A stretch of 59,219 bases of DNA from Octopus bimaculoides (GCF_001194135.2 NC_068984.1:120516647-120575865), one strand, 5' to 3'; positions 9,031 to 54,688 are shown, counted from the first letter of the stretch. Program-made: numbers and translations. The notes: a model not told the origin generated them from the letters alone.

Positions 9031-9140
9031 CACGGCAAATAGTAGGAGCACAACATTCCTCACCGTCACCAAGCTCTCGAAATGTTCGTTCTAAAATTGG
9101 ATCTTTGGACAATGCAAGGCATACACCTGGTGGGGGAAAT
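9031..9140 (+). CDS. MAPT: Tau-like exon carrying repeat R1 (ARQIVGAQHSSPSPSSRNVRSKIGSLDNARHTPGGGN)
   Basis: Acceptor ttatttag|, donor AAT|GTAAGT, 110 nt, phase 1 to 0. Contains the canonical tau repeat SKIGSLDN..H.PGGG. Confidence 0.95.
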
Positions 9141-10799
9141 GTAAGTAATTTAGCAACTCCTTTAATAAATGTTTTGTACTGTCTTTCTCCTTGCACTGAG
9201 ATGAATGCATGAGTGTATGTGTATGAAAAACAGGATAGAAATATAAGGTCTCCATTCTGCTTTCTTTTTTATATTCCTCTCTTATACCCTTCATTTCTTC
9301 TCTGTTTCTCTCTCCATCTAGTATTAGATGATAATTATCTGTGACGAAAAGAGGCTTAATTTGAATTCTATGATGTTTTCCTCTCATTAACTACCACCTT
9401 GTTTTTGGCAGTATAGTTAATGTTAATATAAATCTCTGGTTCATGTATTTATTTACCCTTCTTGACTGCTTATCTCTCAGGAAGAGGCACTCTTACAGCT
9501 TTCTTGACCTGAACAAAAAGAATGCAGTTCAAATATGCTCATGGCACGTTCTAACATGTAAGCAAGCCATTCACCATATTTTGCCATGGAGAAAATTTCA
9601 CACTGTAGACAAATGGTGTAAATACCTCTAAATCAGCTCACAGTGCCACCTACCCAGACTGTAAGATGCAAGCATTTTGGAGTGGTTATCTCCTCTTCAG
9701 TCATAGAAACCGGAGAAGAATAATTTATTTTCCCTACGAACACAAAATGTTGCCAATGAGAGAGTTTAATCTAAAGGTCTGTCTAATACAGATCCATCTC
9801 CTCATCAACTAAACCATTTGTAGCTCACATTTAATTTCTGATAAAATAACAAATAAATTGGCTTGTCAAATTTCTTTCTTTTTTATTTTATTTGCATAGG
9901 CACAATGCCATGCATTTGGTGGTGGGAACTGTGAATTATATCAATCCTAGTCCTTGACCAATACTTTAGCTTATTGACCCTATAAAGATGTCATGATTCT
10001 GTATGGATGTCAGGTAAAGTTCGCTATAGTGAAATTTGAACTTAGGACAAGGAGAGCTGCTTTAACATATTGCAAAACATTTTGTATATTGCTCTACCAT
10101 TTCTGCCAACACCTCACCCTTTATAATCAATATTAACAATGTTAATGGCTGAATCGTTATTTTATGAACAGTATATATAATATTATATATAATACTGATG
10201 TATATAATGTTTATAATGTGTATACAAACATGGAATGGTTCTACCTATAATATTTTGTCTGTGAGAAACTTCTCAAAGAATTGTGTGTTAAAGACACAGG
10301 GCATCATTTAGAATGCCAGTGGATTACCAGACATGGTTGGTGTTTCAACTTGATTTGATTTCCTCATTGAGCTAAACCAAATATGCTTGTTTTGGTAGAG
10401 AAATCAGTAAGGAAAGCATCTACTGATTGGTGCAAAAGCAGGCCAGGCTAGAATCAATTTATGTGCACTTGTAACAGCATCAGATTAAAATACCAGAGTG
10501 TATAATATTTATGTGTATACAAATGTAGAATGGTACTGGCTATCGTATCTTGTAGCCATCACCACTCTCGAACCCTCTTCCTTCTTCCCCTCCTGCTGCT
10601 GCATCCCTCCTCCTCCCTCCCCCTCCTCCTGTTACAATTTTCATTTTTATCTGTTGCATGACATAGTTGGGTTTTTGTAAAGCATCTTTTATGAAAGATG
10701 CTGAATATGAAAGTATTATTATTATTATTTTTTGATTTCTTGATTTATTACCTTTTGGTTTGGTTGATGATCTGCATTGATTTTGTTTTGTATTGGAAG

Positions 10800-10859
10800 T
10801 CAAAGACATCAGGGAAGACTGGCAGATCTAAGGATAGTCCAAGGAAGAAAAAAGCAAAG
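10800..10859 (+). CDS. Candidate 60-nt basic cassette exon (SKTSGKTGRSKDSPRKKKAK)
   Basis: ttttgttttgtattggaag| ... AAG|GTTGGA, phase 0/0, open, K/S/R-rich with an SP motif. Donor is weak. Confidence 0.5.
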
Positions 10860-11261
10860 GTTGGAATTCACACTTGTATTATGCAGCCATTCCGACTACC
10901 AAAGCTCTCCAAAACATTATCCTTGGCACACTCTGTTGTTCACTTCAGATCAATAACAATTACAGCTTAACACTTACCCATAGATATATTCCAATATTAA
11001 TAATACAGTTTGAGTATAACATCAGCTTTCACTATCCCTATCCTAGCTCATTGCTACAGAGTTGGCTAATTTGTAATTACTTTCTAAACAAGCTCTGCCC
11101 CCCCATCATGCTTAAGCTTTGGTACATCACATCAGCTATATGCATGACATTCCTTGTTGGTTACATCTGTTTTTAATGTTTCCTGAATGTTGAAATCATT
11201 TTAGCTACGTTGTATATTGTAATAAATTTCAAATTATTTCATTGGGTATACATACATACAT

Positions 11262-11306
<45 letters not shown>

Positions 11307-12683
11307 TGTACTTATTTGTATGAATGCTTGCATGTATTTTTATAAACATTTGGATCATTCTAACTGTTGTACCACATTTTTCATTGTTGTCATCTTTTTT
11401 GGTATTATCCCCAGCCATTTTCTGGTTTGTATGTAGATACTCATGAACTCGACAGACATACAGCTGCAATTCATGACTGCAACTGTATGTCTGTCAGTGT
11501 TGTATGCCTGTCAGTATTGTGTTTGTATACATACAGCATTTAAAGTTAACCACATTTGAGAAAGATACAGTATCGTTCACTATCCTGACATAAAAAAAGG
11601 TTGGCAACAATAATTGTTTCAGATCTTAATTCAAATTACTAAGCATTCACCTGAAACTATATCACGTGTGTTTACATCACATGTCTTTATTACATATATT
11701 TTTGGTAGCAAAATATATGCATCATACTCTAATTGCTACATTACACTATTCTTGTATACTCTATAGCTGTTTGACATCTCTGGTCTCAGATCGGAGTAAA
11801 ACATGGCATATATGTGGAATACAAGACAAAGTTTGCCTCTATACATTCAGTTGTTTATCCCGCTATCAAAGGTTTGCTCAAGCAGAACTAGCTGGGTTTA
11901 TTCAACAACATCCTTTTGACATAGTATAGATGGAAGGAGATTTGGGTGTTAATTGTTCTGAGGGACCAGATACTGGTACCTTTCTTTGCTTGGGATTTCT
12001 TAAACATCACCTACCACTTGCACTCACAAACATCTTTATTTTATCTACTTCTGTTGATAATGCTAAATTCTCAGAATCTGGAAACAACAAAATAATAAAA
12101 ATCCTAGAAGGACTTTTCATTGATATCACCAAATCCACAGATTTCTTTTTATTGGCTCACTGTGTGGATTTGTGCTGCTACACAACCATCATATCTGCAA
12201 TGTCATGTAATGTATAAGGTTTTCAAAAAAAGAAAAAACTCCCTTCTCTTTACATATTCCATTTTAGTACATATTTTTGATAAGGTTTTTCAAAAACCAA
12301 AATATGTAAAAGGAAAATTAAAATGTACCCAATTTTAAGAAAGTAGCATTTTCGTTCTTGTTTTTCATATATATATATGTATATGCAAAGTCTTAGAGCA
12401 GTAGTTGCATGAGCTGAAAGCATAATCTGTTTAGCTTGATTGGAATATTTTAATGTCTAGCAAGCTGAGATTAAAATGCATCAGTTATTTAAATGCAAGT
12501 GATTGGTACAAATGAAATATATATGTGTATGTGATTGTATGTACACATGAGAGGATAGGCATTATAAATGTCTATATGTTTGATATTGTTTAAAAAGAAA
12601 TGGTGTAGCTCAAGTTTTTACTATGGAGACTGAAAATTATGGTCCACTCTCTGTTTTCTAAGTCTCTCACTCTTTTCATATAG

Positions 12684-12726
<43 letters not shown>

Positions 12727-13453
12727 TTATACATACGTGCGTGTGTGTGTGTGTATACAAATTATATTTTTTATTATATTTGAAGTTGATAGTCTTCTTT
12801 TGAGTTTTGCTCCAGGCTAGGCTGTTTGTGGTTTGACTAATAATATCTAATTTGTCTTTAGTGTTTGTGAATACTTTAGAACTCATCAATTTTGAAATAA
12901 ACTACTTGTATTGTCTGATTTATTTGTGTTTATAGTGGAAATTTTATTGATGCTTTAGGTGAATTCATAAATATTTTTTCATAATGAGATGTAAACTTCT
13001 AAATAGTAATTTTTTAATAACAGTTATGTGGACTTTTACTATAGACTTGGTGATGACATATTAAACACTTCACTGTTTTTAAATTCAAATTGGTTTTCTT
13101 TTTTTTTTTTGTTTTGTTTTTGTATGCATTAGGGCCTGGTAAAATATGGTGTGCCAACTATTTTCCTCTCTTTGTAAAAATATGAATACTATTAAGTTTT
13201 TTTTTTACTAGCAATTCTCTTATAAATTTATTGTGTACATTTATTTAGCTACTCTTTCTCGAATGATAAGTATTATCAAAATGATAATATGAATATACAA
13301 GACTCGCATTCCCAATGTGACTTGGCAGAATGGATAAAAAGCTTATCTTACAATCATGAGGTGTCAGGTGCAATTCCACTGTGCTACACCTTGGTGAAAT
13401 CACGAGATCAATTTAAAATTTGTGAGTGAAATTATCAGCTTTGTCATCTAAGG

Positions 13454-53275: not shown

Positions 53276-54136
53276 GGAGGTGCTTTCAAAAAGTTCCCAG
53301 GCTAGTTATGTTTAATAAAAAACAACTTATTTATCTAAGTTTTAATATCATCTCCTTAGAAATTATCATCTTGTGCTGCAACAGACTGGTCCCAGCTGGA
53401 AGTCATTTTCTGTAAGTGAGTCAAGAACCTTCCGTGATTCATTCCTGATCTCAACAATGGTGTTAAACTAGCAACCTTTGAGCTGCATTTTCATCTTGGG
53501 GAAGAGATGGAAGGTGCTAAATCTGGCGAGTAGGGATGGTACAGAAGCGACACCATGTTGTTTTTGGTGAGAAACTCACGAGTGAGGAGAGCTCGGTGAC
53601 AGGGTCCATTGTTGTCATGAAGAATCCAATTCTTCGTGCTCCACAGATCCAGTCGCTTTTGCTGAATGTTCTCCTTCAAATGCTTCAGAATGTTGCAGCA
53701 GAACTCTTGATTGACAGTCTGGCCCTGAGGGACGAATTCTCGATGCACAATACCATGAATGTTGACAAAAAAAAAGATGGGCATGCTCTTGATTAAGCTG
53801 AGGCTCTGTTGTGGACCCGTGCAACTCGAAACATTGCACATGTCACATTGCCTCATCGCCAGATGCTTGCCAAAGCACACTCAATGTCTCCATAGCAGAC
53901 TTCCCACGTTTAACACAAAATTTCATGTTGGCTCACTGTTTCAACTTCCTATCCATGACAAAAATCGCAGACTATACCATACATGTGGTCACAAAAACAC
54001 AAATTAAACACAAAATAAACAGTGATGCCACTCAGCACATGAAGATCATTGCTAGCTGTCACTGTGCATGCAACTGTGTGCCACCATCTGTTGGTGCCTT
54101 ACAGAACTAGTCCAGGAAGTTTTTGATGCCAACTTG
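53276..54136 (-). mobile_element. Second decayed mariner-like transposon of the same family
   Basis: Similar TIRs. Minus-strand ORF 53491-53880 includes HGIVHREFVPQGQTVNQEF, WILHDN and HPYSPDLAP. Confidence 0.92.
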
Positions 54137-54179
54137 TTATTCACAATTTTTCTCTCAATGATCATTGTAGCCAATTCTG

Positions 54180-54319
54180 TAAATATTATGCAATTTTTTT
54201 TCCATTTGGAGTCAATAAAATAAGTACCAGTCAAGAACTTGAGTCGATGTGATTGACTTACCCACTATCTCAAAATTTCAGGCCTTGTGCCTACAATACA
54301 AAGGATTATTATGATGATA

Positions 54320-54358
<39 letters not shown>

Positions 54359-54575
54359 GTTAGCATACTGGGCAAAATGTGTACTGGTATTTTGTCTCTT
54401 AACATTCTGAATTCAAATTCCACTGAGGTTGACTTTGTCTTTCATCCTTTCAAGGTCGATAAATTAAGTACCAGTTGCATACTGGGTCAATCTAATTGAC
54501 TGACTCCCTCCCCAAAAATTTCAGGCCTTGTGCCTAGAGTAGAAAAGCTTATTATTAATTATTATTATCATTATT
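54180..54575 (+). mobile_element. Two tandem SINE copies of the same family, just upstream of the last exon
   Basis: Same core motifs and (ATT)n tails. Other copies at ~17521-17720, ~19540-19700, ~34526-34760 and ~9900-10090 (minus). Confidence 0.8.
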
Positions 54576-54616
54576 ACTTTTGTCATACATTAATTGAATG
54601 TCTCCTTGTTTTGTAG

Positions 54617-54688
54617 GTTGAAAACCAGGTACTAAAATTCAAAGAAAATGCAGAACCTCGAACAAACACTGGTATTAACAAGTCGTAG
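54617..54688 (+). CDS. MAPT: Tau-like terminal coding exon, R'-like pseudo-repeat (VENQVLKFKENAEPRTNTGINKS*)
   Basis: Acceptor ccttgttttgtag|, phase 0, TAG at 54686-54688. Resembles human exon 13 start IETHKLTFRENAKAKTDHG. Confidence 0.88.
   Translation, partial: VENQVLKFKENAEPRTNTGINKS

What the first reader, a model, noticed from the sequence alone, without database searches (positions are those of the whole stretch)
9031..54688. Tau with 7 canonical (+1 degenerate) microtubule-binding repeats, expanded by symmetric 90-nt exon modules
Seen: seven K/RxGS..H.PGGG repeats on GT/AG exons in compatible phase. R4-R7 are each exactly 90 nt and phase 0/0, so any subset can be included without a frameshift. 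Established: human tau has 3R/4R isoforms through one cassette exon, and Drosophila tau and C. elegans PTL-1 have up to about 5 repeats. Inference: this locus could make a 3R to 7/8R isoform ladder (16 combinations from four exons, more with the extra cassettes), tuning microtubule-binding valency by splicing. More repeat exons could hide in gaps 22168-22578 and 23324-24211.
Basis: partly seen in the sequence, partly recalled or inferred. Interest (0 to 1): 0.88.

Follow-up and report, generated by a model that had tools for sequence, protein, structure and literature searches.

The report
Octopus tau-family gene with modular repeats
This is the 3' two-thirds of an octopus tau/MAP2/MAP4-family gene whose seven microtubule-binding repeats sit on separate in-frame exons, a real and tidy design that is already published or annotated for other molluscs, so it is a good example rather than a discovery.

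Summary
Seven Pfam PF00418 tubulin-binding repeats (E=6.7e-87) lie on + strand AG/GT exons in compatible phase. R4-R7 are each exactly 90 nt and phase 0/0. A degenerate pseudo-repeat forms the last coding exon.

All gaps inside the finding are intronic, and the window is colinear with a gap-free Octopus vulgaris locus (introns about 86-92% identical). That locus has no repeat exon where the two large gaps lie, so the "hidden exons" idea is not supported. An upstream gap (7348-7846) probably hides one more PGGG motif, R0.

The novelty claim fails:
- A 2022 paper reports 7-10 repeats in molluscs.
- An exhaustive search found family members with up to 13 repeats.
- Argonauta hians has the same R0+R1-R7 layout.
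- A land snail has the same 90-nt modules.
- RefSeq abalone isoforms X1-X10 form a combinatorial 30-aa ladder at the homologous position.

The splicing inference is partly supported. The O. vulgaris gene model, built with long-read cDNA (Iso-Seq) among its evidence, omits R5 and R6. Both exons are nevertheless intact there and differ at only 2 of 180 nt from the window. No reads were examined, so the 16-combination ladder is untested in octopus.

The parts
7348..7846 (.).
   Evidence: The flanks map to L004 27551 and 28010. That interval holds the R0 exon of O. vulgaris. Pfam recognises R0 as a tubulin-binding stretch.
7847..7894 (+). Readable 3' end of the R0 / proline-serine-rich exon (SKSPRKSPPSSTQSPG), donor GTAAGC, ends in phase 1
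   Evidence: It joins 9031 to give ...SP-A-RQI..., as in P0323.
9031..9140 (+). Exon R1 (110 nt): RQIVGAQHSSPSPSSRNVRSKIGSLDNARHTPGGGN
   Evidence: 3 of 110 nt differ from O. vulgaris.
17133..17214 (+). Exon R2 (82 nt, phase 0->1): VKIINKKEKYDAVQSRVGSKDNITHRP-G|. Same size and phase as the exon-11-type exon of fish tau and as the snail exon.
18383..18495 (+). Exon R3 (113 nt, phase 1->0): |GGGNIKIENKRLSYLETAKPKVGSLDKVDHKPGGGDKK. The exon-12-type exon.
25183..25272 (+). Module R4 (90 nt, 0/0): ILDDKLEWTVQPKVGSKVNITHKPGGGDKK. Included in the O. vulgaris and Argonauta models.
27148..27237 (+). Module R5 (90 nt, 0/0): VLDEKVEWNVQPKVGSKDNITHKPGGGDKK. Probable cassette exon.
   Evidence: 0 of 90 nt differ from O. 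vulgaris. Omitted from O. vulgaris model P0323. Present in the Argonauta model.
28240..28329 (+). Module R6 (90 nt, 0/0): VMDEKLEWIAQPKVGSKDNITHKPGGGEKK. Probable cassette exon and paralogue of R5.
   Evidence: 2 of 90 nt differ from O. vulgaris. R5 and R6 differ at 5 nt, with no synonymous difference. Omitted from P0323.
27102..29075 (+). Tandem duplication that made R5 and R6 (units about 1.09 kb). The units are 71% identical overall, but 94% over 139 nt centred on the exon.
27238..27325 (+). Conserved downstream intronic block of R5. The equivalent for R6 is 28330-28417. There are also about 35 conserved nt upstream of each exon (27113-27147, 28205-28239).
   Evidence: Conserved in all six R5/R6 copies of the window, O. 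vulgaris and Argonauta. Flank identity between window and Argonauta is higher than for R4.
32918..33007 (+). Module R7 (90 nt, 0/0): IEDQKLEWKAGSKVGSKDNLKHVPGGGEIK. Orthologue of the IEEQK module of the two more distant cephalopod transcripts L001 and L002.
36271..36396 (+). Spacer exon (126 nt, 0/0): ISSQNVLGKEVESNVGCISDEDHQAVGGIASSPPPPSSSLPQ
54617..54688 (+). Last coding exon with stop: VENQVLKFKENAEPRTNTGINKS*. This is the degenerate pseudo-repeat (R').

Best explanation
What it is. The window holds the 3' two-thirds of the single tau/MAP2/MAP4-family gene of an Octopus species. Its introns are about 86-92% identical to O. vulgaris, and O. bimaculoides is a guess.

How the gene is built. 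The microtubule-binding region is modular.
- R1-R3 lie on old exons of 110, 82 and 113 nt. The 82-nt exon and the phase-1 intron inside the PGGG codon are shared with fish tau and with a land snail.
- Four 90-nt phase-0/0 'I-x-D/E-x-K-L/V-E-W...KVGSK.N..H.PGGG..K' modules (R4-R7) follow. They sit between the exon-12-type exon and the pseudo-repeat exon. This is a different intron from the one that holds vertebrate cassette exon 10.
- A 126-nt spacer exon and the pseudo-repeat exon end the coding sequence.
- An eighth PGGG motif (R0) probably lies in the upstream gap.

How the modules arose. They multiplied by tandem exon duplication. R5 and R6 are an octopod-lineage duplicate pair kept similar by gene conversion or by selection.

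How it likely works (inferred). Because every module is symmetric, inclusion or skipping changes the number of tubulin-binding repeats without changing the frame. In octopus, R5 and R6 are the likely regulated cassettes, giving at least a 5R and a 7R form, each plus R0. More repeats should give tighter or more multivalent microtubule binding, as known for 3R versus 4R tau.

My probabilities: gene identity and exon model about 0.97; R5/R6 alternatively spliced about 0.6; free combinatorial use of all four modules about 0.2. The overall confidence of 0.6 given for this explanation is set by its weakest essential part, the alternative splicing of R5 and R6.
For: - Repeats and exons: seven PF00418 stretches, E=6.7e-87; exon limits and phases.
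- Same order in relatives: the exon order matches O. vulgaris P0323 and Argonauta hians GAB1598187.1 (P0169), which has R0+R1-R7.
- Exons are constrained: window exons differ from O. vulgaris at 20 of 863 nt, against roughly 10% in introns. R5 differs at 0 of 90 nt and R6 at 2 of 90.
- The skipped form: P0323 lacks R5 and R6 although both are intact in L004. That annotation used Iso-Seq, RNA-seq, PASA and EVM (PMC10700109).
- Flanking introns: intronic flanks of R5 and R6 are conserved between Octopus and Argonauta.
- Homologous modules elsewhere: 90-nt phase-0/0 modules with the same boundaries occur in the snail Candidula.
- A ladder at the same place: Haliotis rufescens RefSeq X1-X10 include from none to all five of the 30-aa modules directly after the R3 equivalent, in ten different sets. 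Lingula and Clavelina show similar ladders.
- Modules used together: two transcript contigs from more distant cephalopods carry three (L001) or four (L002) modules in one transcript.
- Old exon structure: fish tau has an 82-nt exon of the same phase.
Against: - No reads or junction counts from any octopus were examined.
- The 5R form rests on one annotated model. That model could reflect the pipeline's choice rather than real skipping.
- The collection used here records only the longest product of a gene, so other O. vulgaris isoforms could not be seen.
- The Argonauta 7R model may be built from homology or ab initio prediction.
- The cephalopod contigs come from automatic assemblies, and L002 carries a frameshift.
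- The effect of repeat number on microtubule binding is extrapolated from vertebrate tau.
- The species of the window is not established.
Confidence: 0.6

Rival explanations
1. All seven repeats are constitutive. The gene makes one 7R (+R0) protein, and the O. vulgaris 5R model is an annotation error.
For: The Argonauta model includes R4-R7. The cephalopod contigs L001 and L002 carry three or four modules together. R5 and R6 are as conserved as the constitutive exons.
Against: The O. vulgaris annotation used Iso-Seq and RNA-seq junctions and still joins R4 to R7. The homologous modules are annotated as alternatively used in abalone. The strongly conserved intron flanks of R5 and R6 are typical of regulated exons, which is general knowledge and not tested here.
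Confidence: 0.25
2. R5 and R6 are unused duplicate exons (pseudo-exons). The real octopus protein is 5R.
For: The longest O. vulgaris product on record lacks them.
Against: 2 differences in 180 nt between two Octopus species, against roughly 18 expected at intron divergence. Open frames and consensus AG/GTGAGT sites are kept in the window, O. vulgaris and Argonauta. Both exons are included in the Argonauta model.
Confidence: 0.1
3. The extra 90-nt exons are an assembly artefact of a gapped draft, for example haplotypes placed in tandem.
For: The window has eleven gaps and at least two local misassemblies.
Against: R4-R7 lie in uninterrupted sequence. The R5 and R6 units are only 71% identical outside the exon. 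The same four exons, in the same order, occur in gap-free O. vulgaris and Argonauta assemblies.
Confidence: 0.01
4. R4, R5 and R6 are mutually exclusive alternatives, with one chosen per transcript, as in other tandem-duplicated exon clusters.
For: They are similar, of equal length and in tandem. Contig L001 has only one ILDEK-type module.
Against: Contig L002 carries two ILDEK-type modules in one transcript. The Argonauta model has all three. The abalone isoforms include neighbouring paralogous modules together. The introns are 1-2 kb, so nothing sterically enforces exclusion.
Confidence: 0.04

Closest known systems
Vertebrate MAPT exon 10 cassette (3R/4R tau); checked here on the fish Pimephales promelas tau locus
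   Same: PF00418 repeats. One repeat per symmetric phase-0/0 exon, 93 nt in fish and present twice there. An 82-nt exon ends in phase 1 inside the PGGG codon, followed by an exon ending ...GGGxKK in phase 0. A pseudo-repeat follows the last repeat.
   Different: The octopus modules are 90 nt and sit after the exon-12-type exon, not between the exon-9 and exon-11 types. There are four of them. Invertebrate members are not orthologues of MAPT specifically. The human exon sizes 93/82/113 are recalled from memory, not tested.
Haliotis rufescens LOC124115086, RefSeq isoforms X1-X10
   Same: R0, R1-R3, then an array of 30-aa 'IESKKLEWK..S[KR]VGS..N.KH..GGGDKK' modules at the same position, then a pseudo-repeat. 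The annotated isoforms include from none to all five modules in ten different sets, in 30-aa steps from 1469 to 1619 aa.
   Different: Five cassettes plus one constitutive repeat rather than four modules. A very long N-terminal part. These are predicted isoforms whose read support was not examined here.
Molluscan MAPs with 7-10 repeats (PMC8985376, BMC Genomics 2022), including a 10-repeat Crassostrea gigas protein and O. bimaculoides LOC106878541
   Same: Same family and phylum. The high repeat number of molluscs is reported explicitly there.
   Different: In the passages read, that paper works at protein level. The passages retrieved with the terms octopus, repeats and mollus contain nothing on exon structure or splicing. 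It found the octopus gene only as three fragments.
Argonauta hians GAB1598187.1 ('MAP4-like') and O. vulgaris 'titin-like' protein (GCA_951406725.2)
   Same: Orthologues with identical exon order. Argonauta has R0+R1-R7, the spacer and the pseudo-repeat.
   Different: The O. vulgaris model omits R5 and R6. Argonauta has five further unannotated 96-nt repeat exons before the last exon. Neither is named tau.
C. elegans PTL-1 (isoforms with 4 or 5 repeats)
   Same: An invertebrate family member in which repeat number is changed by splicing. This is from my own knowledge and was not tested here.
   Different: One optional repeat, and fewer repeats in all.

Membership tests
Tau/MAP2/MAP4 family (Pfam PF00418 tubulin-binding repeat proteins) | Tandem 31-32-residue repeats with the K-x-G-S...H-x-P-G-G-G core | tested here: met
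   Seven stretches, E=6.7e-87, 285 bits against a cut-off of 27.
Tau/MAP2/MAP4 family (Pfam PF00418 tubulin-binding repeat proteins) | Repeats at the C-terminal end, preceded by a proline/serine/basic region and followed by a pseudo-repeat (IE.xKL.F.E.A...T..G) | tested here: met
   SKSPRKSPPSSTQSP...SSPSPSS precedes R1. The last exon is VENQVLKFKENAEPRTNTG. The full-length orthologues show the N-terminal projection part.
Tau/MAP2/MAP4 family (Pfam PF00418 tubulin-binding repeat proteins) | Conserved gene structure: an 82-nt exon ending in phase 1 within PGGG, and a next exon ending after GGGxKK in phase 0 | tested here: met
   Octopus 82/113 nt, fish tau 82/107 nt, snail 82/107 nt.
Tau/MAP2/MAP4 family (Pfam PF00418 tubulin-binding repeat proteins) | Binds and stabilises microtubules | not testable with these tools
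   Needs co-sedimentation or microscopy assays with recombinant protein.
Vertebrate MAPT (tau proper) orthologue | Falls in the MAPT clade rather than MAP2, MAP4 or the invertebrate group | not tested
   No tree was built here. Two papers place invertebrate members outside the three vertebrate clades (PMC4815063; PMC8985376). Source names for the orthologues differ: 'MAP4-like' and 'titin-like'.
Cassette (skippable) repeat exons | Length a multiple of three, same phase at both ends, intact splice sites | tested here: met
   R4-R7 are each 90 nt, phase 0/0, with AG and GT sites. Sites are conserved in O. vulgaris and Argonauta.
Cassette (skippable) repeat exons | Transcripts both with and without the exon in the same species | tested here: inconclusive
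   The O. vulgaris model lacks R5 and R6 while the genome has them. The Argonauta model has them. No reads were available, and both forms were not seen in one species.
Cassette (skippable) repeat exons | Exon and flanking intron conserved above the intron background | tested here: met
   R5 and R6 differ at 2 of 180 nt, against about 10% intron divergence. About 35 nt upstream and about 85 nt downstream are conserved out to Argonauta.

The most novel reading that the evidence does not exclude
Molluscs, octopus included, regulate microtubule-binding valency with a multi-cassette array placed at a different intron from vertebrate exon 10. In octopods the R5/R6 pair would be a stage- or tissue-specific switch driven by the roughly 85-nt conserved intronic block beside each exon. 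It would be absent from the forms that dominate the O. vulgaris data, much of which is developmental Iso-Seq, much as human exon 10 is skipped in fetal brain. Copy number then changes fast between cephalopod lineages: four modules in Octopus, four plus a five-copy 96-nt array in Argonauta, and three or four plus one degenerate module in the two other cephalopod transcripts.
Probability: 0.35. Interest if true: 0.5.

Novelty: new member of a known kind. Interest (0 to 1): 0.3.

Why it matters
If the modules are used combinatorially in a large-brained invertebrate, octopus offers a natural series of 5R to 7R tau-family proteins. That series could be used to test how repeat number sets microtubule affinity, spacing and transport. 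It would also be an independent parallel to the 3R/4R switch that matters in human tauopathies.

As it stands, the value is mainly in annotation:
- It gives a clean exon model for a gene that is fragmented or misnamed in octopus annotations.
- It shows that two conserved exons are missing from the O. vulgaris model.
- It shows that five exons are missing from the Argonauta model.

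Tried and rejected
- Hidden repeat exons in gaps 22168-22578 and 23324-24211. Rejected: the corresponding gap-free O. vulgaris intervals have no repeat hit. The ITDEK-type module of the L001 and L002 transcripts has no octopod counterpart in any of three octopod genomes.
- Assembly artefact as the source of R5 and R6. Rejected.
- A 3' cassette in Octopus like the one in Argonauta and L002. None found by protein or DNA search.
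- A third copy of the R5/R6 unit at about 29279. Only the upstream flank is similar, and there is no exon.
- Positive selection between R5 and R6. There are 5 nonsynonymous and 0 synonymous differences, but with 72 and 18 sites this is not significant; it fits gene conversion better.
- An RNA structure at the R5/R6 5' splice site. A small hairpin is predicted, with one-sided changes only, and the fold z-score is 0.45. Not supported.
- Same-species transcripts. None were retrievable. The first two word-index protein searches returned only proteins under about 390 aa and missed the octopod orthologues. These came from the exhaustive search and the third search.
- A literature search for the run accessions of the cephalopod contigs found nothing.
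- Look-ups of the Dreissena and Haliotis loci failed.
- Rfam: no match in the window.
- The human exon sizes 93/82/113 could not be confirmed from the paper library. A fish locus was measured instead.

Full report
**What is in the sequence**

The window is AT-rich (about 31% G+C) and has eleven assembly gaps. On the + strand there are six PGGG motifs, plus a seventh that an intron splits as PG|GGG.

Reading the DNA around each motif gives exons with AG acceptors and GT donors and mutually compatible phases:

| Exon | Coordinates | Length | Phase |
|---|---|---|---|
| R1 | 9031-9140 | 110 nt | 1->0 |
| R2 | 17133-17214 | 82 nt | 0->1 |
| R3 | 18383-18495 | 113 nt | 1->0 |
| R4 | 25183-25272 | 90 nt | 0/0 |
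| R5 | 27148-27237 | 90 nt | 0/0 |
| R6 | 28240-28329 | 90 nt | 0/0 |
| R7 | 32918-33007 | 90 nt | 0/0 |

The spliced 221-aa peptide scores E=6.7e-87 against Pfam PF00418, with seven separate stretches. A repeat HMM built from octopus and other molluscan repeats, run over all six frames, finds exactly these seven. It also finds the last coding exon 54617-54688 (VENQVLKFKENAEPRTNTGINKS, then the stop) as a weak eighth, and nothing else.

Comparison with relatives adds two more exons. One is a 126-nt phase-0/0 spacer exon at 36271-36396. The other is the 3' end of an upstream exon at 7847-7894, which abuts gap 7348-7846.

**The gaps**

The third protein search returned an Octopus vulgaris protein (P0323, 752 aa, named 'titin-like'). 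Its gene lies on a gap-free 79-kb stretch of chromosome OX597817.1, fetched here as L004.

The window is colinear with L004 at about 86-92% identity in introns, so it comes from a congeneric Octopus. O. bimaculoides is a reasonable guess, given the gapped draft style and the gene LOC106878541 mentioned in PMC8985376. I could not prove it.

- Every gap inside the finding is intronic, and both flanks map in order.
- The two large gaps correspond to L004 46125-46463 and 48003-48104. Neither interval, nor any other part of L004 between R3 and R4, has a repeat hit. The suggestion that more repeat exons hide there is not supported.
That interval holds most of an exon encoding KRYGINARNETYRPGGGNVRIFSEKMDFKNVSSRIDSR. 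This is an upstream PGGG motif (R0) that Pfam also recognises. The locus therefore very probably has eight PGGG motifs plus the pseudo-repeat.
- Two small gaps (33736-33748, 34280-34289) sit in a redundantly assembled intronic stretch and do not affect coding.

**What the gene is**

It belongs to the tau/MAP2/MAP4 family. Its closest relatives are Argonauta hians GAB1598187.1 ('MAP4-like', 793 aa) and the O. vulgaris protein.

Argonauta has the same layout: R0, R1-R3, three ILDEK/VLDEK modules, the IDDQK module, the spacer and the pseudo-repeat.

The window lacks the first exon, which encodes about 450 residues of projection domain and lies upstream of the window.

Published trees place invertebrate members outside the vertebrate MAPT, MAP2 and MAP4 clades. 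'Tau' is thus a family label here, not an orthology statement.

**Gene structure in comparison**

- The 82-nt exon that ends one base into the first glycine codon of GGG is also 82 nt in a fish tau gene and in the snail Candidula unifasciata. The next exon, which ends after GGGxKK in phase 0, is 107 nt in both.
- The human sizes that I recall (93, 82 and 113 nt for exons 10-12) could not be confirmed from the paper library.
- Vertebrate cassette exon 10 lies before the 82-nt exon. It is 93 nt and phase 0/0, and is present twice in the fish.
- The octopus 90-nt modules lie after the exon-12-type exon and before the pseudo-repeat exon. This is the same trick at a different intron.
- The snail has two 90-nt phase-0/0 modules with the same boundaries and the same KLEW/KTEW signature. 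The module is therefore old within molluscs.

**History of the modules**

R5 and R6 sit in a 1.09-kb tandem duplication. The two units are only 71% identical overall but 94% identical over 139 nt centred on the exon.

The two exons differ at five positions, all of them nonsynonymous. Other paralogue pairs are near saturation at synonymous sites. This pattern fits gene conversion or sequence-level constraint. It is not statistically significant evidence for positive selection.

A neighbour-joining tree of the 90-nt exons from the window, O. vulgaris, Argonauta and two more distant cephalopod transcript contigs (L001, L002) shows the following:
- an R7 clade shared by all five;
- an octopod R4 clade;
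- an R5/R6 clade in which the two Octopus species group by position, whereas the Argonauta pair groups by species;
- a separate ITDEK clade found only in the L001 and L002 transcripts.

The copy number of these modules therefore does change between cephalopod lineages. The array as such is ancestral.

**Is seven repeats unusual?**

No.
- PMC8985376 (BMC Genomics 2022) reports that molluscs have the highest repeat numbers, with some at 7-10 and a 10-repeat oyster protein.
- An exhaustive profile search with a single-repeat model found 1728 family proteins. By my count, 34 of the best 150 cluster representatives have seven or more matched stretches.
- The top ones are from Lytechinus (13), Lingula (12), Clavelina (11), Nucella (10) and Haliotis (8).
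- PMC4815063 had already noted a fish tau with seven repeats.

**Is there an isoform ladder?**

In relatives, yes, at the level of annotation.
- Haliotis rufescens LOC124115086 has RefSeq isoforms of 1619, 1589 (three), 1559 (two), 1529 (two), 1499 and 1469 aa.
- Reading the sequences shows that they differ only in which of five 30-aa KLEW-type modules, placed directly after the R3 equivalent, are included. The range runs from none to all five, in ten different sets.
- Lingula and Clavelina isoforms show the same kind of ladder.

For octopus the evidence is indirect.
- The O. vulgaris model joins R4 to R7, although R5 and R6 are intact in that genome.
- That annotation used Iso-Seq, RNA-seq junctions, PASA and EVM.
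- R5 and R6 are nevertheless under clear constraint. They show 0 and 2 differences per 90 nt between the two Octopus species, against roughly 10% in introns. Their splice sites are identical. About 35 nt upstream and about 85 nt downstream are conserved as far as Argonauta.
- The Argonauta model includes both exons.
- The two cephalopod transcript contigs carry three and four modules together.

The simplest reading is that R5 and R6 are functional exons that are skipped in at least some transcripts. I put this at about 0.6, constitutive inclusion at about 0.25, and unused exons at about 0.1.

**Mechanism**

Shown:
- the modular, frame-neutral exon design;
- purifying selection on each module;
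- one annotated transcript form without R5 and R6.

Inferred:
- that inclusion is regulated;
- that repeat number tunes microtubule binding. This is extrapolated from 3R versus 4R tau and from MAP2/MAP4 isoforms, which is established knowledge for vertebrates and untested in molluscs.

A small hairpin over the R5/R6 5' splice site is predicted, and it recalls the human exon 10 stem-loop. However, it has no compensatory changes and the fold is no better than shuffled sequence. I do not rely on it.

**Verdict**

The finding is real and neatly described, but it is an instance of something already reported for molluscs and already visible in public annotations of related species. I rate it a new member of a known kind, with modest interest.

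The useful by-products are:
- a corrected exon model;
- the evidence that the O. vulgaris model omits two conserved exons;
- the prediction of R0 in a gap;
- the unannotated five-exon array in Argonauta.

Noticed in passing
L005 (Argonauta hians BAAFZT010000002.1) 51605-58184: Five tandem, near-identical 96-nt phase-0/0 exons encode IEDHKLEFTEKAQPK[IV]GSK[KQ]NL[IV]HQPGGGNVQ. They have ag|...|gtgagt sites and sit in units of about 1.6 kb that are 82-96% identical. They lie between the spacer exon and the last exon and are not part of the annotated 793-aa model. If used, they would give up to 12 canonical repeats. Pfam recognises them.
   Followed up: partly
L002 (Logan SRR27666069 contig) about 1260-1350; searched in window 36397-54616: This cephalopod transcript carries an expressed degenerate repeat cassette (IESRKLDFKDKAQPKIGSLDYQPAGEYVQ) at the same position as the Argonauta array. 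No relic of it exists in the window or in O. vulgaris. The contig also has a one-base frameshift inside R3.
   Followed up: partly
window 27238-27325 and 28330-28417 (also 27113-27147, 28205-28239): Intronic blocks beside R5 and R6 are conserved in all six copies of three octopod genomes. A hairpin over the 5' splice site is predicted but lacks covariation and energetic support.
   Followed up: partly
window 53491-53880, - strand: 129-aa open frame with a mariner-type transposase remnant (PF01359, E=9.6e-6) in the last intron, next to gap 53083-53143.
   Followed up: yes
window 33583-34469: About 886 nt, including two small gaps, correspond to only about 9 nt of O. vulgaris. 34228-34279 is repeated exactly at 34290-34341 across the 10-N gap. 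This is probably redundant assembly of a repeat-rich intron stretch.
   Followed up: partly
window 31-526 and 573-1399: The two blocks on either side of gap 527-536 map to O. vulgaris in swapped, overlapping order (L004 21890-22399 and 21152-22008). This suggests a local misjoin or a rearrangement at the start of the window.
   Followed up: no
window 17485-17716, 33117-33326, 33565-33715, 34475-34767, 51059-51680, 54215-54576: Copies of an interspersed repeat of about 200-290 nt (70-77% identical to each other) are scattered through the introns. It is also present many times in the O. vulgaris locus.
   Followed up: no
window 55124-55638: A block downstream of the stop codon is 95.9% identical to O. 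vulgaris, well above the intron level. It is probably conserved 3' UTR.
   Followed up: no
window 29279-29345: A partial third copy of the upstream flank of the R5/R6 unit (72% identical to 28134-28200), with no exon after it.
   Followed up: yes
tool behaviour: The word-index protein searches returned only proteins of a length similar to the query and missed the full-length octopod orthologues, which the exhaustive representative search then found. Negative results from those searches should be read with that in mind.
   Followed up: yes
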